14,007 nucleotides of DNA from Octopus sinensis (taxonomy: Eukaryota), in NCBI RefSeq assembly GCF_006345805.1, contig NW_021825981.1, forward strand, positions 1 to 14,007, in the 5' to 3' direction. The position numbers were made by a program, and so were the translations under genes. Of this stretch, positions 1-14,007 are shown piece after piece (positions within the stretch are counted from its first letter, which is position 1; the number at the start of each line of letters is the position of its first letter). Under the pieces are notes generated by a model. It had not been told where the DNA came from. It saw nothing but the letters and a program-made list of their open reading frames with translations, and made no database searches.

Positions 1-33
1 TTCGGGTGGTAGACTGTAGTTTAGGTTATATAG

Positions 34-586
34 GAGAAGAAAATGGATAAAATAACAAAGGGACACTCGTCGTTTTCGCTGGTATACTCTTTACTCTCTT
101 TTTACTCTTTTACATGTTTCAGTCATTTAACTGCGGCCATGCTGGAGCACCGCCTTTAGTCGAGCAAATCGACCCCGGGACTTATTCTTTGTAAGCCCAG
201 TACTTATTCTATCGGTCTCTTTTTGCCGAACCGCTAAGTGACGGGGACGTAAACACACCAGCATCGGTTGTCAAGCAATGCTAGGGGTACTAACACAGAC
301 ACACAAACATATACACATACATACATATACACATATATACGACAGGTATGCATTTAATTTAATTAGATAACAGAGAAGGAGGAAGCAATGATGAATGTAG
401 CACTTACGATCGTTTCGATTTACAAGTTTTAGTAAATCTCTTCAGAATGCGAAAAGAAGATTGATGCTTCGGATAGGATGCGAAAATAATTGATACATAT
501 GTGACGGTAGTAGGAGCAAATTAAGTAGTTTTTACATTAAAATTTTGTTCTTGCGCTGGTAATTTCGCTGGGAGCGGTTCCATTGC
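34..586. repeat. Left arm of inverted repeat IR1 (interrupted by a SINE at 86-344)
   Basis: 34-85 joined to 350-586 is the reverse complement of 711-1000 (e.g. GATAACAGAGAAGGAGGAAGCAATGATGAATG vs CATTCATCATTGCTTCCTCCTTCTCTGTTATC). About 20 differences over ~290 bp by eye. Spacer 587-710. Confidence 0.95.
86..344 (-). mobile_element. 5'-truncated tRNA-derived SINE (octopus-type) with a probable 5-bp target-site duplication
   Basis: Shares its body with the fuller copy at 6363-6740 (CTGCGG..GCTGGAG, AGTACTTATTCTATCGGTC, ACGGGGACGTAAACAC). It has an (AGAGTAAA)-like tail on the minus strand at 86-110, and GGTAT flanks both sides (81-85, 345-349). The uninterrupted IR1 right arm shows the empty site. 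Confidence 0.88.
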
Positions 587-710
587 AATAGTCTGGTTAG
601 TTTCGTTGGGCAATTAGAACGGGGTGAGTATTATTTTGGTGTGGGGTTCCGAGTTTGACTAATCGCATTATTTCGCACGTGTGTATTAAATTTGTTTTTG
701 TTCTCGAGTC

Positions 711-1000
711 GCAATGAAACCTTCCCCAAGCGAAATTACCAGCGCAAGAACAAAATTTTTAAGTTAGAACTACTTAATTTGCTCCTTCTACCGTCATATA
801 TGTATCAATTATTTTCGCATCTTAACCGAAGCATCAATCTTCTTTTCGCATTCTGAAGAGTTTTACTAAAACTTGTAAATCGAAACGATCGTAAATGCTA
901 CATTCATCATTGCTTCCTCCTTCTCTGTTATCTAATTAAATTAAAGGCATACCAGTAAAAACGACGAGTTTCCCTTTGTTATTTCATCCATTTTATTCTC
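711..1000. repeat. Right arm of inverted repeat IR1
   Basis: Reverse complement of 34-85 + 350-586; abuts the microsatellite starting at 1001. Confidence 0.95.
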
Positions 1001-1069
1001 ATATACATACATACATACATATACACACACACACCACACACACACACACAAGCACACACACACACCACC

Positions 1070-1118
<49 letters not shown>

Positions 1119-1130
1119 TGTATATGTATA
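1001..1130. repeat. Compound (TACA)/(CA)/(TA) microsatellite
   Basis: Direct inspection. Confidence 0.95.
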
Positions 1131-1134
1131 TATG

Positions 1135-1294
1135 ATCAAAAATAAGCAACAAGAATGAATCCGGTAATTTAGTACTTGTTTCATACTACAACATTTTATT
1201 AAAAGCTGTAAATAATAACAGCTTTTAATAAAATGTTGTAGTATGAAACAATTGTACTAAATTACCGGATTCATTCTTGTTGCTTATTTTTGAT
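1135..1294. repeat. Near-perfect hairpin palindrome IR2
   Basis: Arms 1135-1209 and 1218-1294, 8-nt loop AAATAATA, one 2-nt indel (GAAACAAGTACT expected, GAAACAATTGTACT seen). Confidence 0.97.
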
Positions 1295-1392
1295 TATAAT
1301 CACCCCGCATATTTTTATGGGTAACACCATAAAAAATTCTGGGGCATCTAATTAAGTGACATATTCATTTGAATCTAAATTGTTGCTGAACT

Positions 1393-1452
1393 TATATATA
1401 TGATATATATATATATATATATTATTATATATATAATATATATATATATATA
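1393..1452. repeat. (TA)n microsatellite
   Basis: Direct inspection. Confidence 0.95.
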
Positions 1453-2040
1453 TGCGTTTCTGTTTATTTAGTATATAGTGTTTAAGAAAGCGAAAGGAAA
1501 TCGACTAAGCATGACGACAGTAATACCTAAAAATTTCATAAAGAGAACAGGTGAAACCCCTTAATTGTATTGACGGAAGAAAGTTCAACAAGGGCATATT
1601 TCCGATGCTGTAATGACCCGGCCAACCCATCGCCTAAACTAAACCAACAAACTATGCTCGTAGAAGCCAATGTGATAGCCGTTGCACTGCTGCTGGATCT
1701 GTTAGAAATGACAGTCAAACTTTTCGTTTTAAAATAAGGAAGGTGAGCTAAAATAATGTAATCGAAGATTCATTAAGTCTGGAGGAGCATTTCCAATGAG
1801 ATGAGCGCAGCTGGAGCGTCTTTGAACATTCGATCACATAGAGCTGACCGAGAGCCAAACAACTCAATGATGCATTCACTAGGTGATCCATAAGTAAAAA
1901 GCAGTCAAATCTATATGAAATTACATGTTTAGAAAAGAAGGACGTATTATATGATGTGGTCATACATAAGCTTGAAATATAGATAGGATTGGATGGTCAA
2001 AATTATCAAAGATGTGTAGCGTGTGATCGTCGCATTGAAC

Positions 2041-2122
2041 ATGACAGAACAAATTGAGCAGAGAATCTACGTGAAGTTTTGCCAAAAGCTTGGCGATGTC
2101 TGCTCAGAGGCCCACACAAAGT
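2041..2122 (+). pseudogene. Mariner (Tc1/mariner) transposase N-terminal fragment
   Basis: ATG at 2041 reads MTEQIEQRIYVKFCQKLGDVCSEAHTK, matching the mariner N-terminal EQRxxIKFCxKLG DNA-binding motif. Similarity stops at about 2120. Confidence 0.75.
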
Positions 2123-2372
2123 TTTCAAAAAGTTTTCATCATTCTTGACACAATCAAGCAGATCTTGTGCAGCTGAAACCCGGGTGTCTTTTTGGTCAAC
2201 TGAAAGCAGTTTTGGCACAAACTTGACAGAAACGCGTCTCGTACCCCAAATCTTCAGTGATAATGGACTGAAATGAACCATAACTAATCTGCACATCCTC
2301 TGATAACTCACGGATGGTGATTCGACCATTTCCTCTCACAACTGCACGCATATCTGCGATATTTTTCTTGGT
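2117..2372 (-). pseudogene. Mariner transposase internal fragment, frameshifted and inverted relative to the N-terminus
   Basis: Minus strand reads KKNIADMRAVVRGNGRITIRELSEDVQISYGSFQSIITEDLG, then a +1 frameshift at about 2244-2247, then RRVSVKFVPKLLSVDQKDTRVSAAQDLLDCVKNDENFLKTL. This is the second HTH plus the linker (FVPKLL, the WVPHEL equivalent), ending just before the TGDE catalytic motif. Confidence 0.87.
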
Positions 2373-2378
2373 TATATA

Positions 2379-2421
<43 letters not shown>
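2373..2421. repeat. (TA)n microsatellite truncating the mariner relic
   Basis: Direct inspection. Confidence 0.93.
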
Positions 2422-2423
<2 letters not shown>

Positions 2424-2600
2424 CGTTAGCCACTACACACATTTTTTCTCTCCTTGTTTTTTCTGTGTACCTTTCTGTAGAAGAGCGTTGGCTCGAAACG
2501 TAAAAGACTTTTCTATTCCTGAGCGCTATACTAATACATCTGTTTTTGTTTTGTACACCACCTGTCTTCGTCTTTTGTTTTGTTTTTCGTAAACTTACCC
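2422..2600. mobile_element. Possible Penelope-like element terminal fragment, or short non-autonomous repeat
   Basis: CTGTAGAAGAGCGTTGGCTCGAAACGT (2476-2501) resembles the CTGAAGA..CGAAACG motif typical of Penelope-like terminal repeats. Bounded by (TA)n on both sides. Assignment is from recollection only. Confidence 0.42.
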
Positions 2601-2735
2601 TATATATATATATATATATATATATTATACACATATATATATCATATCGAAGGGAAAATGTAAATCAATAGAAATTTTCACTTCCAGTGGCCTAGCGTGT
2701 AAAAATTTAGTCCAAAGACTATGTATTACTCATAA

Positions 2736-3220
<485 letters not shown>

Positions 3221-3906
3221 ATAATTTAATCGACAAATATTTTGTCAGAACTCACTTTAAAGTATTAAATTTTTTACACTCGGACTTCTAACTTCGAGTT
3301 TTTTTATTATTTGTGTGTGTGTGTGTGTGTGCGCGCGCGCGCCTCTCTGTGTACGTGTGTGTTTTTGTGTGCGTGCTTGTGTGTGTACATGTGCGATTGT
3401 GTGCGCCCACCAGCAAGCTTATGTGTACTCATATTTTTACATATTACCTCGCTAGTTTCGTCTGATTGAATCCATGCCGGAGTACCGTCATAAACAGAAG
3501 TGTTTATACCTTTCGCATGGTATTTCGTGAGTGAGGGTAAAAGCGATACCAATGCTCTCATATGTTAAACACATGCTGAGTTCAATCGAATTAGTGTCAT
3601 CCAAACAATGTGACACACACACACGCAACGAACAACCATGAGTTGCTTTTCGAAAAGGTTGACATCTACTCTATGAATACGCCTTAACCCAACTGAGGAA
3701 TGATAGAAAAACGCTGAGGTCATTCGAAACCCGATCTACCACAGTCCCTAATTTATTGGGATTTTATCGAGAAGGATACAGAACCATCGGTAACTCTTGA
3801 ATAACGATTAGTCCGTGGATTCGAACATTTAAAAAAATCGGAGTTCGATTCGGTGTCTATTCTTCGAGCGCAAAACACTTGTGTGCCTATTCGTGCACCC
3901 GCGTTG

Positions 3907-4200
<294 letters not shown>

Positions 4201-4393
4201 CTATCAAGCTATTTCACTATCTATCCTTTTATTCTTCAACAAGAATATCACTGACAGTGACTTCGAAGTCTCGGACAGCTAAGTCATCGGCGTTTAAGAA
4301 TAATAAATTTGTATACTACAAAAGTATCGAGTAGCCCTTTCAGATTAATGTAAAATTGTTTCTATAATTACTGAACATAAAAACAAACTTTAA

Positions 4394-4805
<412 letters not shown>

Positions 4806-4989
4806 TTATACAAGTGTGTGTGTGTGTTCGTGACATATATGCATTTCTGTTACATATATACGTGTCTGTTTGTCGACATTGTGTAATATACAGTAACCTA
4901 ATATACTAGTATGTACTTGAGAAGTACATATTACGTAGTACCTTTTTCATAAGATAAAAAATTGTCCAACTCTTAAAGATATTTTATAC

Positions 4990-5487
4990 CTATATACATA
5001 CGCACACACATACATATACACACAAATGTATGCATGTATGTATGTATGTATGTATATATATAATATAAATATAAATATATATATATATAGTTACATGTGG
5101 TGGGAGGGACTAGGCATGTGGAGAAGAATGAACGTGTTGGTAGAATTACGCAGTTAAATATATGTATTTGTATACGCATAATATAAATGCGGCTGTGTAT
5201 GTGTATATGTGTGTTTGTATATTTGCGTGTGTGTATGCGTGTGTGTGTGTGTGCGTGTGCGTGTGTGTGTGAGAGTGGATGCGTGTGTGAGCGAGAGATT
5301 GAGAAAGAGTAGGTGAGGATGAATGTCTGTAAGAACAGATATTACGCAGTAAAATAAATGTATATGCGCTTGTGTTAGTGCGTATATATATACATACATA
5401 TATATATATATGTATATTTATATATATACATATATATACACATACACAGACATACATATACATACACACACGCATACATATATATAT

Positions 5488-5523
<36 letters not shown>

Positions 5524-5597
5524 ACCTACACAGGCATACATATACATACACATACGCATACATATATCTTATAATATTATATATATAATTATATATA

Positions 5598-5628
<31 letters not shown>

Positions 5629-5720
5629 TGTATGTATGTATGTATGTATGTATGTATATATATATATAATATATCTATATTATATATATATATATGTATA
5701 TTAATATTTATATATATTGT
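4990..5720. repeat. Low-complexity (TA)/(CA)/(TG)/(TATG) field
   Basis: Direct inspection; short unique islands within. Confidence 0.9.
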
Positions 5721-6055
5721 ACGTAGGTATGTGTGTCTTTTTGTGTACGTTGTCAGAGTATCAAATTATCTCAAGTCGTGCTATATATTGCGTATGTATT
5801 TCCAATTAACTGATATATATACACACGTATATGTATGTATTCTCAGGAAGCGTTGCCAATAAGCAAACCTTACAAGTTATGCCTCCCCGCAAAAAAAAAG
5901 TGATAAAAGGGACGACAATCCGAAGAATAGTGGCTAAAAACACACAAATTGCTAATAAATAGGAACTTTTCAACATTTTCTATACATGGTTCATATGGTT
6001 TCTTTACGAGTGTATGTGCGTGTATACATAGTTCATATATATGTGTAGGCATGTA

Positions 6056-6138
6056 GGGATATATATGTATATATATATATATTATATATATATATATATA
6101 TATCCTACATATATATATGCGTGTGTGTATATATATAC

Positions 6139-6177
<39 letters not shown>

Positions 6178-6227
6178 GGTGTGTCTATATATATATATAT
6201 ATATATAATATATATTTAGTATACATG

Positions 6228-6301
<74 letters not shown>

Positions 6302-6319
6302 ATATATATGTGTATATAA

Positions 6320-6362
<43 letters not shown>
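6056..6362. repeat. Interrupted (TA)n field
   Basis: Direct inspection. Confidence 0.95.
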
Positions 6363-6364
<2 letters not shown>

Positions 6365-6740
6365 TCTTTTATTTGTTCAGTAATTTGACTGCGGGCCGTG
6401 CTGGAGTAAGCCTAGTACTTATTCTATCGGTCCTACGGGGACGTAAACACGCCGACATCGGTTTTGTTAATCGATGGTGGGGGACAAACACAGATACACG
6501 AACAAACATACATACATGCATACATACATACATACATACATACATACATACATACATACATACATACATACATACATTGTATTTATTTATTTATTTATTT
6601 CAGTTTTTGTCTACCAAATCCACTCACAAGGCTTTGGTTGGGCCGAAGCTATAGTAGAAGACACTTGCGCAAGTTGCCACGCAGTGGGACTGAACCCCGA
6701 ACCATGTGGTTGTAAGCAAGCTACTTACCACACGGCCACT
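6363..6740 (-). mobile_element. Near-full-length tRNA-derived SINE (same family as 86-344)
   Basis: Minus-strand head AGTGGCCGTGTGGTAAG (A-box-like, + 6724-6740) and GGTTCAGTCCC (B-box-like, + 6686-6696). Internal (TACA)n, and a 3' body homologous to 110-300. Confidence 0.88.
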
Positions 6741-7765
6741 ATAAAATATGTAACGGGTGATATTATTTAGTAAACAGTAATATGAGAAGACGATAGTCGA
6801 TACATAGTAGGATGGAATGTCGGAGTCGTAATCAGTGTGTAAGAATTGGTTCTTCGTTGATAGCCATTATGTAAAGGTGAAAGAAAAGTGATTGAAGTTG
6901 CGAAGAAAATATTTATTTACCGTTACACTGAATATAATACCTTGCTTCGACGGGCAGGTGATAAAATCCTAGAGCGTGTGAAATAAAGTTAATTTCGGTG
7001 GTAAACCATAGAGAGAGACATAGTAATGTGCAGAAAAGATAAAGTGAGTTAGTGAAAGTGAGAGAGTGTGGAAAGTTGGGTCTCATAGCTACTGAGAGTA
7101 GATTTCATTTCTCCTTTTGACCATTGAATTTATTAGCTGCCTTGCTACTAAAGACAATGATTCTAGCGTTCCGCTCCCTAACTGACGGAAGCTGTCTCTG
7201 ACTCGAGTTTGTCATTCATTAACTAACTGATTGAGTTGTCACGAGCCGACTAACTCAGTTGTCACCAAGTCAGTAACTGATTTTTGCTTGGGGTTCTTGC
7301 TTTTATAACTATCCAGAAGGATATCGTTCAGAACAATGGGCTTCGTTGGTGGTACTGTGATATCTCTATTCTAGCTTTTGGTGAAGTAGAAGAGGTTATA
7401 AGTGTCAAGTGGTGAAGACATTATTTCGGCCTAGCTTAAGGCATCTGGCATATGTAAAACTGCTGTCACCGAAAAAGTCATTGTTCCACTGTGAGAAAAG
7501 TTCTGTTGAACTGCTATCGAATCCACTTCATGCTTGCAAGATGCACTACAAATATATGTTGGTATGTAGGTATATATAAATGTATATAGATATAATACAC
7601 CAACATATATATATTCACATACATATACTTAATAGAATGCATACATACACACACATGCACACACACGTATATATGTGTGTGTGTGTGTGAGTGTGCGTGT
7701 GTATAACACTTTCCTACATTTAGTAGGTAAAGGGAAACTTTTAAATTCTCCAGTCCGTTAGGTTG

Positions 7766-9020
7766 TCACTCTACTACTGCAATATATATGATGTTATGCA
7801 CAAAATTAATTATAAATGACTTATCAATCCATCTAACAAATGTTAATAAGACCCGAGCACAATACCTCAGAATATACAACAAAGGGCACCCTTGACAAAC
7901 CTGAGAAGTAACTGACATCCTGTATATTATCAACAAAACGCATGTGATTGTTGTACAGCTTCTGCACACAGTATCCTTCTGAATAAGAACATCACTAGGA
8001 CTAACTACGACTTCGATAAACCTACCAATCCTGCTACTGATTATGACTAATAGTGTGTTTAGTGAAGGCAGTACAACGGCCTGAATTGCACTCTGCGTGT
8101 GATCTCAAACACATTGTGTAATTGTAAATGTCCTTGCTTCTGTCCATTAGATAATAAGTGCCTAACGAACGGCATTGATTTTATTTGTAATGGCTTCAAA
8201 TCTAACTTACATGACATGACCTATAGGTCCGAAGATAAGGCTGCTGGTACATTTTAAAAATAATTTGGAAAGTAAAGAACCATTTGTTTGACTACAGTAT
8301 CGAATGGCTGATCGTTCAACGCGCGAAACCCTATAGTAGTTACTAGCAGTATCGCCCGGCGTTGCTCAGGTTTGTAAGGGAAATAACTATAAAGCATTTT
8401 TAGAGAGTTATAGCCAAAAATTAGCAAAAAAATGGTGGAGTTGCGTCCCCTAGACAGTTTGCGGTTTGTGTTTCTCATTCTCGACCCCATGTCGAATTTA
8501 TCGATTTTTTTCAGAACTGGGGGAACTTTTCAAAATTTTCGCTGCGTTAGTTTTGAATTATGACATTGGGCTATGTGTGTGTCAAGTTTCATCAGAATCG
8601 GTTGAAAGCCGTGGTCAGGGTGAGGGTACAAGCAAACAGACACACAGAAACACGCACAGACAAACTGCCGTTTATATAGAGAGAGATAATAATAGGTGCT
8701 TTTTATGCATTACAGAGGTGAGGATCATGTACAGTAAGGACAACATTATCAATAAAATGTAAGCATAAATTACGCAACTCCATCCTCCACTACAAACCCT
8801 AATTCTCTTTTAACATTACTTACTAGTTAATCCCTCTTCATTTATAGTCAATGGTAACTTCTTAAAGAAATCCATTTTCCCTTGTTTGATAAATCATTAA
8901 AACATTATGCAACACTTTCCTTCACTCCAAACCCTACTTCCTGTTAGACAATTCCTGTCACTTCCTACTTATAACTACTGAAAAATTCATACGGTAACTC
9001 GTTTTCACTTGCCTTTAGGG
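7766..9020 (-). pseudogene. Highly decayed non-LTR (L1/Tx1-like) reverse transcriptase relic, interrupted by a Helitron
   Basis: Minus-strand motifs occur in the canonical order: PKGK/ELPYEFFSS (~8975-9020; cf. KSPGxDGLPYEFY), KLPLTINEE..RELGFVVED (~8790-8860; cf. RPITLLNxE..KRLxxVV), KSMPFVR (~8161-8182; cf. QSKAFDR) and VTSQVCQGCPLLYIL (~7868-7912; cf. VRQGCPLSPLLY). Many stops and frameshifts. Confidence 0.5.
8343..8686 (-). mobile_element. Non-autonomous Helitron (~344 bp)
   Basis: On the minus strand it begins TC (TCTCTCTCTATATAAACGG), ends CTAG, and sits between A and T with no TSD. A GC-rich imperfect hairpin (+ CCCGGCGTTGCTCAGG, 8355-8370) lies about 10 nt from the 3' end. All are canonical Helitron hallmarks. 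Confidence 0.85.
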
Positions 9021-9276
9021 CCGTACTTTGTGTATCTAACATTATTTAGTGCAATTATGATCTTCCCTGATAAACTTTTCATCTATTTTTATTAACTAGT
9101 ACATCAAACTCTGGATGCTACATTACTCCTCTGTGTTACTACTACCTGGCGAAGAGGGGATCTGGCTGACATTAGTATACTTCCGATACCTTTTGCTCCA
9201 GGCAACTAACTTATTTGGTTACTTTCCGATTTCCCTGAGTGTCATGTAATATTCTAATTCTTACTAACAATATAGG

Positions 9277-9588
9277 ATCTTTACCTTTTGACCAGCAGAT
9301 TTACAAAATAATTTTTTGTAACTAAACATTTTCAAACTTCGTATACTGGTAGAATGTGTCATATAAAACATCTTTTACTCTTAGCGTTTTAAAGAAAAGT
9401 TTATATTTACGAAGTTATTTCGTGTTAAAGTTGTCGTATTTCGGTAATTTCAACCAATCAATGACGTGTATTCAGCTGAATAAAATTACTACCGTTACTT
9501 GTCTACAATAACTATCGGCGGTGTATATTTCGTTTGTCACTGTTATTTATGACATATTTCATAAATCTGCCGGTCAAAAGGTAAAGAT
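9277..9588. mobile_element. MITE with 27-bp terminal inverted repeats
   Basis: ATCTTTACCTTTTGACCAGCAGATTTA (9277-9303) vs TAAATCTGCCGGTCAAAAGGTAAAGAT (9562-9588), 26/27 complementary; non-coding interior. Confidence 0.85.
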
Positions 9589-10956
9589 ACCCAATATGTT
9601 TTCATGTTTCGTTTTACTAAAAGATCAACAACTTAAACGAGCACGTGAGTGCTTCTTTGTGCGAATGAATTTATGTATCTATAACTACACATGTAACCTT
9701 TACCTGTCTCATTTCAGTATTTTTGTCGCAAGATTTCTTATTTCTGTCATTGTCTTTAATTAACTTCCAGCATATGTCAGCATGTATGCATGCTTACATG
9801 TATATATGTGGTTACATATATACTTCTTATTGCACCTTTGTTTGAATGTCGTACGATGCTATTCATTTGTAAAGATTTTTGTCTAAGTATGTCTGTACTT
9901 GTACCTATATTTTCTTATTTTTTAGCATATGAGTGGGTAGCGGGTTTCTAGACACATATTCGTATAATTAGCCGTGTGTGTTATCTAAGAATATGTGTGT
10001 GTGTGTGTCTATATATGCACGTATATGTATGTATATGTGCACGTATATTTGTTTACATGCGTTTACATAAGTGCTAATGGTTATATGTATATACTGATAT
10101 ACTTCGTACACGTACGTCTACATAGTTTCTCGTTTTTTCTTTCTGTGAGGGTACGCGTGGACTAGTGTATTCGTGTATGTATACATGCAGGTAACCTACT
10201 ATCATCACTTTACTTTATCCTTATTCTTCTTCATTTCCCTTTTCTTTCCTCTTCCGTTTTTTTTTTAAAATTCATATGACATGTTATTATTCATATTTAT
10301 CTATTCCTAGCAATAAACATCACAACTTTCGGCGCGCAGGTTGCCCATTATTGATGCCATATATACATTAATGCGATTATAATCTACAGCAGCCACTACA
10401 ATAATTCAAGTAGGCTGATAAAGAAACGAAACCACACCCCTATCTATCTCGCTAAGGTAATCGTTGAGTAGGGCACACCATTCGTTCTTTACCGATTTCA
10501 ATTTACACTTTCATCTTTTTCATTCTTTCTGCGAGCCCGGCTTTGTTTTGCATTCTCCATTACGGCGGACTATTTGCAGTCAAACTGTCGTATGTACCTG
10601 ATGAAAAAGTACACCAGACGGTTACAAGAAATTCGTAATGTTACGTAAAATGCACACGATATGCTTTTGAAACAATTGTAGTACTCAACTACCTCTTCCA
10701 TTTCTTTTATTTACACATTTGATTATCGCATTATAAACAATGATAGTTGCTTTGTTGTATAGCATCTGTCATTTTATCGGATGATATGGGACGAAATGTA
10801 TTCGATGCATTGATTAATAAATTTTATGATCAATTAGCAAGTCATCTGTATTTTCCATACAAGCAGTGTTTATGCTACAGACTAACCGACTGTGTATGCC
10901 ACAATCTCTCGACTGAGCCTACATTATTTCTCCTTAACTTTTTACACCCCTAAACA

Positions 10957-11075
10957 CACACACACACACACATGTATGTATGTATGTATGTATGTATGTA
11001 TGTATGTATGTATGTATGTATGTATGTATGTATGTATGTATGTATGTACGTACGTAAGTATGTATGTACGGGTAT
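10957..11075. repeat. (CA)n + (TATG)n microsatellite
   Basis: Direct inspection. Confidence 0.95.
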
Positions 11076-11585
11076 ATATAAAGTTAGGGAGAATTTTTTT
11101 CTAAGTTCTTTTCTTTTCGTAATAAGCAACGAAATTTCAAGATCTGTCACGTTTTCCTTAAAGGTTTACGAAGAATAAAAGAAATTCCAGAAATCAAGAG
11201 AGGGGTTACACACAAACACCCCCACCCTTCAAGTGAATGACTGAGCGTGTGTAATGCATGGCTGTGCGCGTCACCATGTTTTTTTGTCTCTAACTGGGTA
11301 TCAGCTGGTGTCTGTTTCGTGTACTTATGCATATGCGCATGTGCGAAACATGGTTTCATATAATGTAGATGTGAATGTACTTGTGGGTGTGTGAATCTTA
11401 AATGATTTTCACCCTGTCTGTACGTGTACATGTGTAGGTGTATGTGTGCGTGTATGTGCACACGCGTTTGTGGTGTGTGTGTGTGTGTGGTGCGTGCGCG
11501 TTACAAAGTTGCATCATAGTGCGTGTTTTGCATGCTGTACGTTTCGACTGTTTCCGAATATCACTGGTTTCAGTTCCTAGGTGTG

Positions 11586-11853
11586 GAGGCACATGGCCTA
11601 GTGATTAGAGCATCGGACACGTGGTTGAAGGATCGCGGGTTCGAATCTCAGACCGGGCGATGTGTGTGTTTATGAGCGAAGCACCTAAGCTCCACGCGGC
11701 TCCAGCAGAAGGTAATGGCGAATTGTGCTTACTCTTTCACCACAACTTTCTCTCACTCTTTCCTCCTGCGATGGACCGGTGTCCCTTCCAGGTGGGGAAC
11801 CTATACGCCAAGGAAACCGGCCCTTATGAGCCAGGCGTGGCTCGAGAAGGACA
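11586..11853 (+). mobile_element. Full-length tRNA-derived SINE with a perfect 12-bp TSD; probable V-domain core
   Basis: A box TGGCCTAGTGA (11594-11604), B box GGTTCGAATC (11638-11647), and TTCCTAGGTGTG at 11574-11585 and 11854-11865. CCTGCGATGGACCGGTGTCCCTTCCAGG (from 11765) resembles the V-SINE core. Confidence 0.92.
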
Positions 11854-12045
11854 TTCCTAGGTGTGCATACAACACCAAAGTTATCAGGTTCTTTTTGCCG
11901 ATGCACTGATGACAGTATCTTGTAGCCATATCCTTTCTATGATGGTCTGACTACTGGAAACACCTTTTACCCGCAGAATACGTCAAATATATAACGTATA
12001 TATTTGAATACGTGGCTGAATTTCATTTTGAAGTACCACTTAGAT

Positions 12046-12144
12046 CACTGCTTCGCAACCGGTATGCCGCGGCACATTGGTATGCCACGAGACGATGCTA
12101 GGTGTGAGAGTCTGAATGCAAAGAATAGTAGCCGCAACAGTAGG

Positions 12145-12196
<52 letters not shown>

Positions 12197-12199
12197 GTA

Positions 12200-12235
<36 letters not shown>

Positions 12236-12936
12236 CAGCAGCAGCAGCAGCAGCTGTTGCGGTGGCGGAGGTGGTGGTGGTGTGGTAATTTCAAATTTTG
12301 GCACAGGGCTAGCAGTTTTTGAAAGGGTGTTGAAGCCGATTGCATCGACCCCAGTACTCTAACTGTTACGTATTCGGCGATCATTCGGTACTAGTAACAT
12401 AACTGTCACTTATAAACGCACATGGGTTTATTTACATTTCTGAAGAAAAGATACCCTACCCTTCCCCAACCCTAACACCACATATATAAAAGAAATAAAA
12501 ATTTTACGGAAAGTGACGATCTTCTTCTTCAAATGTAAACAAATACACGTGATGTAATGGGACTCATATCGAAAGAATGCCACTTATTCTATAGAATCCA
12601 AATCATGATAAGAGGAATAAATATTTCGCAAAATTAAAGAAATATTTTTGTCCGAAGCGATTAGCAGAGCGCTCAATAAAAATGGAAGAAAACAAAATCG
12701 TACTTTTTTTACATACAAATCTAAAACAAGCTGCGCTTCCTTTTTTCCCTTGCGGTACACGTCTCTCTTTGGCAAATTCGACGGCACACCTGAACTAAAA
12801 ATATAACTAAAACTAGAGAAAAATTATATTCAGGTTACATCGCGGCACACCTAGTTATATTTTTAGTTCAGGTGTGCCGTCGAATTTTGCAAAGAGAAGA
12901 CGTGTACCGCAAGTGAAAAAAGGTAGCGCAGCATTG
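12046..12936. mobile_element. hAT (Buster/Charlie-type) MITE, rearranged by an internal inverted duplication
   Basis: 15-bp TIRs CACTGCTTCGCAACC (12046-12060) and GGTAGCGCAGCATTG (12922-12936), 12/15 complementary. 8-bp flanks ACTTAGAT / TTTTAGAT (6/8, central TAGA as in Buster/Charlie targets). Repeated subterminal GGTRTGCCR motifs. Confidence 0.78.
12105..12809. repeat. Left arm of inverted duplication IR4
   Basis: Reverse complement of 12852-13605; the non-microsatellite part is about 96-97% identical by eye. The left arm lacks 19 bp present at about 13573-13591. Confidence 0.97.
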
Positions 12937-13465
12937 TTTTAGATTTGTATGTAAAAAAAGTACGATTTTTGTTTTCTTCCATTTTTATTGAGCGCTCTGC
13001 TAATCGCTTCGGACAAAAATATTTCTTTAATTTTGCGAAATATTTATTCCTCTTATCATGATTTGGATTCTATAGAATAAGTGGCATTCTTTCGATATGA
13101 GTCCCATTTACATCACGTGTATTTGTTTACATTTGAAGAAGAAGATCGTCACTTTCCGTAAAATTTTAATTTTTTTTTATATATGTGGTGTTAGGGTTAG
13201 GGGGAAGGGTATCTCTTTTCTTCAGAAATGTAAATAAACCCATGTGCGTTTATAAGTGACAGTTATGTTACTAGTACCGAATGATCGCCGAATACGTAAC
13301 AGTTAGAGTGCTGGGGTCGATGCAATCGGCTTCAACCCCCTTTCAAAAACTGCTGGCCCTGTGCCAAAATTTGAAATTACCACCACCACCACCACCTCCG
13401 CCACCGCAACAGCTGCTGCTGCTACTACTACTACTACTACTACTACTACAACTACTACTACTACA

Positions 13466-13529
<64 letters not shown>

Positions 13530-13605
13530 ATAATAATAATAATAATCCTACTGTTGCGGCTACTATTCTTTACATCCTCTTTCTCTTCATACATTCAGAC
13601 TCTCA
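12852..13605. repeat. Right arm of inverted duplication IR4
   Basis: See left arm; includes a (CCA)/(GCT)/(ACT)/(AAT) trinucleotide block at about 13380-13546. Confidence 0.97.
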
Positions 13606-13611
13606 ATCTCT

Positions 13612-13654
13612 TTCACACACACACACACACGCACACATTCAAATACACACAGAC

Positions 13655-13703
<49 letters not shown>

Positions 13704-13745
13704 ATATGTACATACATACACACACACGTATGTATATATATATAT
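13612..13745. repeat. (CA)/(TCTG)/(TC)/(TA) microsatellite
   Basis: Direct inspection. Confidence 0.93.
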
Positions 13746-14007
13746 TTGTTGTGCAAGATTTTTTATGTGAAGTCGTGTGTTGAAACAGATATTGTTATAT
13801 TTCGGAATGGTCATTTTGCCAGTTTAGCCAATATACATTTATATATATTCATATACATATACAAACATATATACACACATGCATGTATGTACTTGAATGC
13901 ATCCATGTATGTATGCTGGTGTGTGTGTGTGTGTGTGTATGTGTAGTGACTAAATGAATAGATACTTCGCAATGGTAGAGAGAATTACTCTATCATGCAA
14001 AAACAAT

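What the first reader, a model, noticed from the sequence alone, without database searches (positions are those of the whole stretch)
12046..13605. Fully reconstructable four-point template-switch event inside a hAT MITE, creating a 1.5-kb palindrome
Seen: join 12046-12106 (..GATGCTAGGTGTG), the reverse complement of spacer 12810-12845 (CCGCGATG..CTAGTTT) and 12852-12936. This rebuilds a seamless ~182-bp hAT MITE with TIRs and a 6/8 TSD. So the ancestral locus L-A-B-R became L-rc(B)-rc(A)-B-R, where B is ~750 bp (MITE right end plus flank). Junction 1 shares TG (12105-12106) between GGTGTG and TGAGAGTCTGAATG (rc of 13592-13605). Junction 2 shares TAG (12852-12854). A tell-tale 9-bp inverted pair CTAGGTGTG (12098-12106) / CACACCTAG (12846-12854) marks the overshoot. 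Established: this geometry is what replication template switching (FoSTeS/MMBIR, four-point model) predicts. Inference: the event started in the hairpin-rich MITE interior or during repair of a transposase cut. The outer TIRs now enclose captured flanking DNA and a third, inward-facing TIR (~12727-12740), making a Pack-type composite element or a new foldback mini-element.
Basis: partly seen in the sequence, partly recalled or inferred. Interest (0 to 1): 0.78.

Follow-up and report, generated by a model that had tools for sequence, protein, structure and literature searches.

The report
Inverted duplication inside a Buster-type hAT MITE
A small non-coding transposon of the hAT/Buster family was broken by one copying error that pasted about 750 bases of its right end and neighbouring DNA back in reverse; this made a real 1.5-kb palindrome, which is a clean but ordinary example of a known type of rearrangement.

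Summary
Arms 12105-12809 and 12852-13605 form an imperfect palindrome around a 42-nt asymmetric spacer. In the non-microsatellite part the arms differ by about 1.8% substitutions plus small indels.

Joining 12046-12106, rc(12810-12845) and 12852-12936 gives a 182-bp element. It has 12/15 TIRs and a 6/8 8-bp TSD (ACTTAGAT/TTTTAGAT). It is the only such TIR+TSD pair within 400 bp of the junctions, and none appeared in 60 shuffles.

New independent support: both ends of the reconstruction align with the ends of autonomous Buster-family hAT transposons from aphids, a shrimp, Xenopus and unnamed Logan assemblies. The left 67 bp aligns without gaps, with GTGCCGCG motifs at positions 16, 34 and 56. 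The window as it stands leaves the family exactly at junction 1, inside the third motif. The reconstruction restores that motif.

The geometry is a "3-1-4-2" four-point event with 2-nt and 3-nt microhomologies. Replicative template switching is the most economical cause. A staggered-break inversion with fill-in gives the same product and cannot be excluded.

Not testable here: genomic copies of the MITE, the orthologous locus, spanning reads, the octopus origin, and any mobility of the new composite. This is a known kind of event, of modest interest.

The parts
12038..12045 (+). Left target-site duplication ACTTAGAT of the original MITE insertion
   Evidence: It matches 12937-12944 at 6 of 8 positions and has the central TA of the Buster consensus nnnTAnnn.
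12046..12106 (+). MITE left end (reconstruction positions 1-61). It holds the TIR at 12046-12060, motifs GGTATGCCG at 12061 and GGTATGCCA at 12079, and a truncated third motif GGTGTG at 12101-12106.
   Evidence: It aligns without gaps with the left ends of Buster hAT elements: blastn 51/61, E 4e-14; alignment A1; motif scan.
12105..12106 (.). Junction 1 microhomology TG (switch points 1 and 2)
   Evidence: TG is shared by the end of L (GGTGTG) and by rc(13592-13605). The neighbouring base mismatches.
12105..12809 (-). Left palindrome arm, the reverse-complement copy of B (MITE right end plus about 670 bp of flank)
   Evidence: In the non-microsatellite part it differs from the right arm by about 1.8% substitutions plus small indels.
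12719..12726 (-). Inverted copy of the right TSD (ATCTAAAA)
   Evidence: It is the reverse complement of TTTTAGAT and lies directly next to the third TIR.
12727..12809 (-). Inverted copy of the MITE right end. The third, inward-facing TIR is at 12727-12740.
   Evidence: Alignment A2. Relative to the right-arm copy it has a 1-bp deletion in the TIR and T for A at a position where the three autonomous elements in A2 have A.
12810..12845 (-). Spacer segment A: MITE interior (positions 62-97), present once and inverted
   Evidence: It is contiguous on the minus strand with both the overshoot and the left arm (hit 53-178 to 12854-12730). Its first six bases, read as the reverse complement (CCGCGA), match the family consensus.
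12846..12854 (-). Overshoot CACACCTAG, the reverse complement of 12098-12106 (switch point 3). TAG at 12852-12854 is the junction 2 microhomology (switch point 4).
   Evidence: Read directly from the sequence. It completes the third GGTGTGCCG motif on the minus strand at 12843-12851.
12852..13605 (+). Right palindrome arm B, in its original orientation and continuous with the downstream flank R
12852..12936 (+). MITE right end (positions 98-182). The TIR is at 12922-12936, with GGTGTGCCG at 12871.
   Evidence: It aligns with the right ends of Buster hAT elements from aphids and a Logan contig (A2). A Xenopus element shows the same layout.
12937..12944 (+). Right target-site duplication TTTTAGAT
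13573..13591 (+). 19 bases present only in the right arm, 12 nt in from junction 1 and bounded by ATG repeats
   Evidence: It is either a later slippage deletion in the left arm or an extra short jump during the original event.

Best explanation
A 182-bp non-autonomous Buster-family hAT element (MITE) had inserted at an 8-bp TA-centred target site. A single switch-and-return copying error later rearranged it.

The event, read on the + strand:
1. Synthesis reached MITE position 61, inside the third subterminal GTGCCGCG motif.
2. It jumped about 800 nt ahead onto the complementary strand at a 2-nt match (TG/CA).
3. It copied backwards through 754 bp: the flank, the MITE right end, the 36-bp MITE interior and 6-9 bases of already-copied sequence.
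4. It returned to the original template at MITE position 98 through a 3-nt match (TAG) and carried on.

The same product arises if the event ran on the other strand, with a fork U-turn at the CTA...TAG pair first.

The result is L-rc(B)-rc(A)-B-R: a 1.5-kb imperfect palindrome with an inverted 36-bp spacer and a small 9-bp inverted pair. This is the '3-1-4-2' class of the four-point model.

Shown: the ancestral sequence, the four breakpoints, the microhomologies, and the hAT/Buster identity of the element.

Inferred: that the cause was replicative (an intra-fork strand switch or MMBIR-type repair synthesis) rather than breakage and rejoining; that a single event made it; and that the arm differences arose afterwards.

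The structure probably has no function. Its likely consequences are a hairpin or cruciform-prone site and, if transcribed, a long hairpin RNA.
For: Structure:
- Palindrome arms and the asymmetric spacer.
- MITE positions 53-178 are contiguous on the minus strand and overlap the left piece by 9 bp.
- A simulated two-switch product reproduces both junctions.
- There is a unique TIR+TSD pair at 12046/12936, with none in 60 shuffles.

Family evidence:
- The motif GGTRTRCCR occurs five times in the 14-kb window, all inside the MITE pieces. Mononucleotide shuffles give 0.35 per window. The motif was derived from these same pieces, so this count is partly circular.
- The left 67 bp aligns without gaps with the left ends of Buster hAT elements that have the same three motifs at positions 16, 34 and 56. 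These elements come from Aphis glycines, Uroleucon formosanum, two Logan assemblies and Palaemon.
- The window as it stands diverges from all of them exactly at junction 1.
- The right end aligns too.
- The aphid element has TIRs, a 7/8 TSD and a hAT dimerisation domain. Its relatives are named ZBED5/SCAND3-like, and ZBED5 is Buster1 (PMC3606216).

Literature:
- The TSD fits nnnTAnnn: PMC3517528.
- The 3-1-4-2 class is described as inverting the spacer and creating two inverted repeats: PMC5453318.
- The central junction uses a 3-bp interrupted inverted repeat spanning 48 bp. Leading-to-lagging strand switches in yeast use 2-14 bp repeats, and spans of 40-80 bp are over-represented: PMC10766183.
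- The predicted ssDNA fold pairs positions about 23-33 with 57-66, so junction 1 lies in a stem.

Against an artefact:
- Each arm carries its own departure from the autonomous elements in A2: T at 12738 in the left arm and A at 12914 in the right arm. This is a weak hint that both arms changed after the duplication.
Against: - No outgroup, second haplotype or read data could be examined, so the ancestral L-A-B-R state is reconstructed, not observed.
- No other copy of this MITE could be found. There is none in the window, none in the viral or prokaryotic genome collections, and no true hit in the metagenome scan.
- The staggered-break model gives the identical sequence.
- The 19-base difference next to junction 1 and the large microsatellite differences are not explained by one clean two-switch event. 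They need either a further jump or later mutation.
- The arm differences are rich in indels and transversions (3 ts, 7 tv, about 8 indel events). Some may be assembly errors, so the apparent age is unreliable.
- The fold of the reconstructed MITE is not unusually stable (z = -1.26), so 'hairpin-rich' is only weakly supported.
Confidence: 0.6

Rival explanations
1. Staggered-break micro-inversion. Two pairs of offset single-strand breaks (or offset breaks on sister chromatids) occurred, one pair 6-9 nt apart and the other about 754 nt apart. The 36-bp segment A was inverted and rejoined by end joining. Fill-in of the overhangs left inverted duplications of unequal length at the two ends.
For: This model predicts exactly L'-[3..1]-rc[4..2]-rc(A)-rc[3..1]-[4..2]-R, which is the observed order. 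The model and its known indistinguishability from other routes on sequence pattern alone are reviewed in PMC7584159. Junction homologies of 2-3 nt also fit end joining.
Against: It needs four coordinated nicks, including a 754-nt overhang, around an inverted segment of only 36 bp. A single switch-and-return needs two steps. The central junction has the short interrupted inverted-repeat signature and the 48-bp span typical of fork strand switches.
Confidence: 0.17
2. Multi-step history. One route is a double-strand break in the MITE, fold-back priming of the resected end on the CTA/TAG pair, joining to the other end, and then a flip of the spacer by exchange between the arms. Another route is an inversion followed by a separate duplication.
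For: Fold-back inversions from resected breaks use the same kind of short interrupted inverted repeat (abstract of PMC7467729, listed; alternative discussed in PMC10766183). Long inverted arms can in principle invert their spacer.
Against: By my own strand-by-strand derivation, fold-back on the right-hand fragment gives L-rc(B)-GGTGTG-A-B-R, with the spacer in the opposite orientation to the one observed. It also needs GGTGTG on both broken ends, which one clean break cannot supply. An exchange that flips a 42-bp loop is sterically unlikely, as argued for short spacers in PMC8755829. It also requires more steps.
Confidence: 0.1
3. Transposase-driven rearrangement. This would be aberrant hAT/Buster cleavage or one-ended or alternative transposition, with hairpin formation on donor DNA, producing the inverted duplication.
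For: The event lies inside a hAT element. Junction 1 falls in a subterminal motif of the kind transposases bind. By general knowledge, hAT excision makes hairpins on flanking DNA, and the unambiguous overlap (4-9 bp) includes 8 bp, the hAT stagger.
Against: Neither breakpoint is at a TIR end. A flank hairpin would centre the palindrome exactly at 12936/12937, whereas the centre lies at MITE positions 53-100. The ends of the copied segment B have no TIR-like sequence (TAGTTATA... and TGAGAGTC...). The 9-bp pair is inverted, not direct.
Confidence: 0.05
4. Assembly or sequencing artefact, such as a fold-back chimeric long read or a mis-join.
For: Palindromes are a known long-read artefact (general knowledge). 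The arm differences are rich in 1-bp homopolymer indels. No reads could be checked.
Against: A fold-back chimera is symmetric about a point and carries the spacer sequence on both sides. Here A occurs once, the arms end at a defined outer junction with unique sequence beyond on both sides, and both junctions show microhomology that fits a biological ancestor validated by family alignment. The arms also differ by a 19-base indel and by microsatellite arrays of very different make-up.
Confidence: 0.05

Closest known systems
Four-point-model template-switch mutations, class '3-1-4-2' (Loytynoja & Goldman 2017, PMC5453318; Walker et al. 2021, PMC7954356)
   Same: One switch-and-return. The 2->3 fragment is copied as a reverse complement. 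The point order on the ancestor is 3<1<4<2. The spacer is inverted and two inverted repeats are created, here 9 bp and 754 bp.
   Different: The published events are short-range, and the authors say they do not model long-range switches. Here the copied fragment is about 800 nt. The ancestor is reconstructed from one sequence, not seen in a sister genome.
FoSTeS/MMBIR inverted duplications, fold-back inversions and ODIRA-type leading-to-lagging strand switches (PMC10766183; PMC7467729; PMC11293582)
   Same: An inverted duplication with an asymmetric spacer that equals the sequence between a short interrupted inverted repeat (3 bp, 48-bp span). Junctions have 2-3 nt of microhomology. There is possibly an extra short jump near the first junction.
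   Different: The scale is under 1 kb rather than kb-Mb. It is a duplication, not a triplication. No replication origin needs to lie inside. It is a germline-fixed structure in repeat DNA, not a selected amplification.
Inversions flanked by inverted duplications from staggered breaks (Ranz 2007, Kehrer-Sawatzki 2005 and Matzkin 2005, as reviewed in PMC7584159)
   Same: The final order of segments is identical: an inverted core flanked by inverted duplications of unequal length.
   Different: Those cases are chromosomal inversions with kb-Mb cores. Here the inverted core is 36 bp and one 'overhang' would be 20 times longer than the core.
Buster-family hAT transposons and their MITEs (e.g. Mar in Drosophila, PMC3517528; TcBuster; ZBED5 = Buster1, PMC3606216)
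   Same: 8-bp TSD with a central TA. TIRs of about 15 bp starting with CA. Subterminal repeated motifs. Both termini are homologous to autonomous Buster-type elements. The element is small and non-coding.
   Different: Only one copy, and a broken one, was seen. Copy number and the autonomous partner in the source genome are unknown. The left TIR reads CACTG where the family has CAGNG.
Pack-type TIR elements and foldback elements
   Same: The intact outer TIR pair with its TSDs (12046-12936, 891 bp) now encloses about 620 bp of former flanking DNA. The inner pair (12727-12936, 210 bp) consists of two right ends facing each other, a foldback-like layout.
   Different: There is no evidence of mobilisation or of further copies. 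The captured DNA is non-genic. The inner left TIR has a deletion and a substitution.

Membership tests
hAT superfamily, Buster family (non-autonomous MITE) | 8-bp target-site duplication with Buster consensus nnnTAnnn | tested here: met
   ACTTAGAT and TTTTAGAT match at 6/8 and both have TA at positions 4-5. Consensus from PMC3517528. The aphid and shrimp relatives also have TA-centred TSDs.
hAT superfamily, Buster family (non-autonomous MITE) | Short terminal inverted repeats starting with CA | tested here: met
   CACTGCTTCGCAACC and CAATGCTGCGCTACC match at 12/15. It is the only such pair with a TSD near the junctions.
hAT superfamily, Buster family (non-autonomous MITE) | Termini homologous to those of an autonomous element that encodes a hAT transposase | tested here: met
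   Left 67 bp: blastn 51/61, E 4e-14, against L021:4762-7305. That element carries Pfam Dimer_Tnp_hAT, and its relatives are named ZBED5/SCAND3-like. Alignments A1 and A2.
hAT superfamily, Buster family (non-autonomous MITE) | Small size and no coding capacity | tested here: met
   The reconstruction is 182 bp and has stop codons in all six frames.
hAT superfamily, Buster family (non-autonomous MITE) | Multiple copies in the host genome and a cognate autonomous element there | not testable with these tools
   The source genome is not in any searchable collection. Searches found no further copy.
Four-point template-switch event (3-1-4-2) | The derived sequence equals ancestor[..1] + reverse complement of ancestor[3..2] + ancestor[4..] | tested here: met
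   The simulation reproduces both junctions. The rest differs only by arm divergence, the 19-base indel and microsatellite lengths.
Four-point template-switch event (3-1-4-2) | The ancestral state is observed in a related sequence | not testable with these tools
   No orthologous or allelic sequence is available. The ancestor is supported only indirectly, by the 9-bp overlap and the family alignment.
FoSTeS/MMBIR | Microhomology at each junction and a templated inverted segment | tested here: met
   TG at junction 1 and TAG at junction 2. There are no untemplated bases.
ODIRA | Inverted triplication containing a replication origin, with both junctions at short interrupted inverted repeats less than about 100 bp apart | tested here: not met
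   The structure is a duplication. Only the central junction has a close interrupted repeat (48-bp span). The partners at junction 1 lie about 800 bp apart.
Pack-type composite TIR element | Host gene fragments captured between TIRs, with evidence of transposition (extra copies with their own TSDs) | tested here: inconclusive
   Flank DNA does lie between intact TIRs. It holds no ORF with a database match and no Rfam hit. Extra copies could not be searched for.

The most novel reading that the evidence does not exclude
The palindromisation did more than break a MITE. It created a new mobilisable element. This would be either the 210-bp inner unit made of two right ends facing each other (12727-12936) or the 891-bp outer composite (12046-12936). 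Either would have since spread as a new foldback-type family. That would show template switching to be a direct route to MITE birth and to capture of flanking DNA by hAT/Buster elements.
Probability: 0.06. Interest if true: 0.55.

Novelty: new member of a known kind. Interest (0 to 1): 0.33.

Why it matters
This is a tidy natural example of a switch-and-return rearrangement of intermediate size (about 800 nt). It sits between the short template-switch mutation clusters studied in primates and the kb-Mb inverted duplications of disease loci.

All four breakpoints can be read from a single sequence, because the disrupted element belongs to a transposon family with a conserved terminal layout. 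That makes it a useful teaching or benchmarking case for callers of inverted duplications. It also shows how new long hairpin loci can arise.

It does not change any current view. The mechanism class, the transposon family and the outcome are all known.

A by-product is that the terminal architecture of this Buster lineage is shared by elements from insects, a crustacean and the window's genome (left end) and by a frog element (right end). This can help annotate Buster-derived MITEs.

Tried and rejected
Searches that led nowhere:
- Looking for more MITE copies. blastn and Smith-Waterman against the rest of the window gave nothing above shuffles.
- The TIR-pair pattern scan of metagenome contigs returned 20 loci. 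Most are high-GC and none resembles the MITE; twelve belong to one high-GC bacterial inverted-repeat family.
- A 25-mer from the MITE right end is absent from the viral and prokaryotic genome collections.
- Looking for the same locus elsewhere. ORFs 13281-13946(+) and 12584-12787(-) are not on record.
- Identifying the organism. A search with the mariner-like remnant gave one anonymous 994-bp ENA contig. A literature search for the Logan run accessions found nothing. The octopus origin stays unverified.
- Rfam gave no match in the window.

Explanations rejected:
- Fold-back priming from a single break. By my own derivation it predicts the opposite spacer orientation and cannot supply the 6-9 bp overlap.
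- A transposase-made flank hairpin. The centre would be at the TIR/flank boundary.
- Arm B being a mobile element inserted twice. It has no TIRs or TSDs at 12105/13605, it contains the MITE end plus the TSD plus unique flank, and it has no other copy in the window.
- A fold-back chimeric read. The spacer is asymmetric and the arms are finite.
- The 16-nt similarity at 11850-11865 to the end of L. I treat it as chance (flags short two-copy families as often chance).
Full report
**1. Observation**

Reading 11800-14007 and the repeat scan show a long inverted repeat. A gapped alignment of 12080-12860 with the reverse complement of 12800-13640 sets the left arm at 12105-12809 and the right arm at 12852-13605. 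A 42-nt spacer (12810-12851) lies between them and is not symmetric.

blastn of the right arm against the window finds only itself and the left arm, over 727 nt at 91.5% identity. Most of the divergence lies in trinucleotide arrays. The left arm has about 18.7 ATT units and 14 TAG units. The right arm has one 36-unit array at 13422-13529 and only a few ATT units.

From 12256 to 12809 the arms differ by 3 transitions, 7 transversions and about 8 small indel events. Next to the outer junction the right arm has 19 extra bases (13573-13591), bounded by ATG repeats.

- TG (12105-12106) is shared at junction 1.
- TAG (12852-12854) is shared at junction 2.
- CTAGGTGTG (12098-12106) has its reverse complement CACACCTAG at 12846-12854.

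**2. The reconstructed element**

The three pieces sum to 182 bp. The same call shows that positions 53-178 of the reconstruction are physically contiguous on the minus strand (12854-12730, 96% identity to the right-arm version). The only inferred join is therefore the 9-bp overlap between that stretch and 12046-12106.

The ends are CACTGCTTCGCAACC and CAATGCTGCGCTACC (12/15). They are flanked by ACTTAGAT and TTTTAGAT (6/8). I scanned every pair of positions within 400 bp outside the two junctions for at least 12/15 TIR plus at least 6/8 TSD. Only 12046/12936 qualified, and none of 60 shuffles gave any pair.

A motif GGTRTRCCR occurs five times in the 14-kb window, all inside the MITE pieces. 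Mononucleotide shuffles give 0.35 per window. The motif was derived from these same pieces, so this count is partly circular. No other copy of the element is in the window.

**3. Independent test through related transposons**

The source genome is not in the searchable DNA collections:
- The metagenome scan with a TIR-pair pattern returned no locus resembling the MITE, and most hits were high-GC bacterial repeats.
- A 25-mer of the element is absent from the viral and prokaryotic collections.

A protein search with the six reading frames of the reconstruction gave two weak hits to aphid gene models. Both share the peptide SQPVCRGTLVC..LGVPR, encoded by MITE positions 7-67.

The fetched Aphis glycines locus holds a 2,544-bp element, L021:4762-7305, with these features:
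- TIRs CAGGGTTTCCCAACC and CAGCGTTTCCCAACC, and TSD ATATATAA/GTATATAA.
- An ORF with the hAT dimerisation domain.
- Its three concatenated ORF translations find hundreds of proteins, of which the named ones are ZBED5-like or SCAN domain-containing protein 3-like. ZBED5 is Buster1 (PMC3606216), which places the element in the Buster family.

Left ends from five related elements were compared: two aphids, two Logan assemblies and the shrimp Palaemon. All share one layout:
- a 15-bp TIR;
- GGTGTGCCGCGGCAC directly after it;
- further GTGCCGCG-like motifs starting near positions 34 and 56.

In alignment A1 (which holds the aphid and Logan left ends) the reconstructed MITE follows this layout without a gap through position 67. 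The window as it stands agrees through position 61 and then departs from every member. That point is junction 1. The six bases supplied by the reverse complement of the spacer (CCGCGA) equal the family consensus.

The right end, in both window copies, aligns with the family's right ends in A2. The shared features are the TIR, a T-run, CGGCACAC near position 28 and again near position 58. A Xenopus element shows the same layout. The TSD has TA at positions 4-5, the Buster target consensus (PMC3517528).

The element is therefore a Buster-type hAT MITE, and the join across junction 1 is supported by evidence from outside the window.

**4. Geometry and mechanism**

Take ancestor = L (to 12106) + A (rc of 12810-12845) + B (12852-13605) + R. 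The present sequence then equals ancestor up to point 1, plus the reverse complement of ancestor from point 3 (GGTGTG, possibly from CTA) to point 2 (end of B), plus ancestor from point 4 (start of B). A scripted version reproduces both junctions.

The order on the ancestor is 3<1<4<2. Loytynoja & Goldman describe this class as converting the spacer and creating two inverted repeats. Here the repeats are 9 bp and 754 bp.

The central junction uses a 3-bp interrupted inverted repeat (CTA...TAG) spanning 48 bp. In yeast, leading-to-lagging strand switches use 2-14 bp repeats, and spans of 40-80 bp are over-represented (PMC10766183).

Junction 1 lies inside the third subterminal motif. In the predicted single-strand fold this motif pairs with the inverted motif copy at positions about 23-33. 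The overall fold is not unusually stable (z = -1.26).

I therefore favour a single replicative switch-and-return, either an intra-fork strand switch or MMBIR-type repair synthesis. The 19-base skip, 12 nt after junction 1, could be a further short jump by a poorly processive polymerase or a later slippage deletion. The sequence cannot tell which.

**5. Rivals**

- **Staggered breaks.** A staggered-break inversion of the 36-bp core with fill-in gives the identical order of segments. The literature regards such routes as indistinguishable on pattern alone (PMC7584159). It needs four coordinated nicks and a 754-nt overhang.
- **Fold-back priming from one break.** By my own derivation this predicts the spacer in the other orientation. 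It also cannot put GGTGTG on both ends. A later flip of a 42-bp loop is sterically unlikely (argument in PMC8755829).
- **A transposase cut.** This would centre the palindrome on the TIR/flank boundary. The ends of B have no TIRs.
- **A chimeric fold-back read.** This would be symmetric and would carry A twice. It would not give a defined outer junction, a 19-base indel or differently composed microsatellites.

Each arm also carries its own departure from the autonomous elements in A2: T at 12738 in the left arm and A at 12914 in the right arm. This weakly suggests that both arms changed after the duplication. The indel-rich, transversion-rich differences may partly be assembly error, so I do not date the event.

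**6. Comparison with what is known, and novelty**

Every component is known: Buster hAT MITEs, template-switch inverted duplications, and microhomology junctions.

Two things are unusual. The size is intermediate. All four points can be recovered from one sequence, because the broken element has a conserved terminal layout.

The intact outer TIRs now enclose former flank, and there is an inner pair of facing right ends. There is no evidence that either unit moves, and the inner left TIR has a deletion and a substitution.

I rate this a new member of a known kind, with interest about 0.33.

**7. Limits**

I could not obtain other genomic copies of this MITE, the orthologous locus or reads. I also could not confirm that the window is from an octopus.

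Noticed in passing
window 2006-2560 (- strand): Remnant of a mariner-type transposase N-terminus (…GRITIRELSEDVQISYGSFQSIITEDLG… then, after a frameshift, …RRVSVKFVPKLLSVDQKDTRVSAAQDLLDCVKNDENFLKTL). Only about 100 codons remain, and TA and AT microsatellites lie on both sides. The sole database relative is an anonymous 994-bp ENA contig at 69% identity.
   Followed up: partly
L021:4762-7305; L022:5474-6433; L023:965-; L025:280-; L027:740-; L024 right end at 2823; L026 right end at 3611: The terminal layout of this Buster hAT lineage is strongly conserved. On the left it is a 15-bp TIR plus GTGCCGCG-like motifs starting near positions 16, 34 and 56. On the right it is a TIR, a T-run and two CGGCACAC-like motifs. 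It is shared by aphids, a shrimp, unnamed Logan samples and the window's MITE (left end), and by a frog element (right end). The transposases in this set are only about 45-66% identical to the aphid query. The conservation looks like a family trait and does not by itself indicate horizontal transfer.
   Followed up: partly
L021:3001-7582 (P0002, Aphis glycines) and L022:3001-6681 (P0001, Uroleucon formosanum): Both annotated aphid 'hypothetical proteins' contain the peptide SQPVCRGTLVCR(E/K)AHLGVPRNFMTINKR. This is the left end of the Buster transposon read as an exon. In P0002 it is fused to a P-transposase-like RNase H domain, so these look like chimeric gene models built across nested transposons.
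   Followed up: partly
L001-L004, L006, L008-L010, L012, L015, L017, L020 (metagenome contigs, mostly Ga0316217): The TIR-pair pattern happened to pick up a family of about 155-170-bp inverted-repeat units in contigs of about 65-73% G+C. Their ends read TGCTGCGCAACCGCCGGGACGCGATC...GGCGGTTGCGCAGCA, with an internal GTGTCCCA...TGGA core. This looks like a bacterial repeat family and is unrelated to the window.
   Followed up: no
window 13573-13591 versus 12118/12119: A 19-base stretch (TATGAAGAGAAAGAGGATG on the minus strand) is present only in the right arm, 12 nt inside junction 1. It lies between ATG repeats and has one adjacent substitution. It is either a later slippage deletion or an extra short template jump of the original event.
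   Followed up: partly
window 12145-12253 versus 13413-13546: The homologous trinucleotide arrays in the two arms have very different make-up. The left arm has about (ATT)18 and (TAG)14. The right arm has a 36-unit array with two interruptions and only a few ATT units. The arrays have been remodelled since the duplication, or assembled differently.
   Followed up: no
window 1-11500: The window is extremely rich in microsatellites (29 Tandem Repeats Finder rows). Examples are (TATC) about 107 units at 4394-4809, (AT) about 155 units at 6059-6364 and (TA)n/(TATA)n at 5383-5717. No ORF suggests a host gene.
   Followed up: no
window 11850-11865: GACATTCCTAGGTGTG resembles the end of the MITE left piece (GACGATGCTAGGTGTG, 12091-12106) at 13/16 positions. 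Nothing around it matches the MITE, so it is probably chance.
   Followed up: partly
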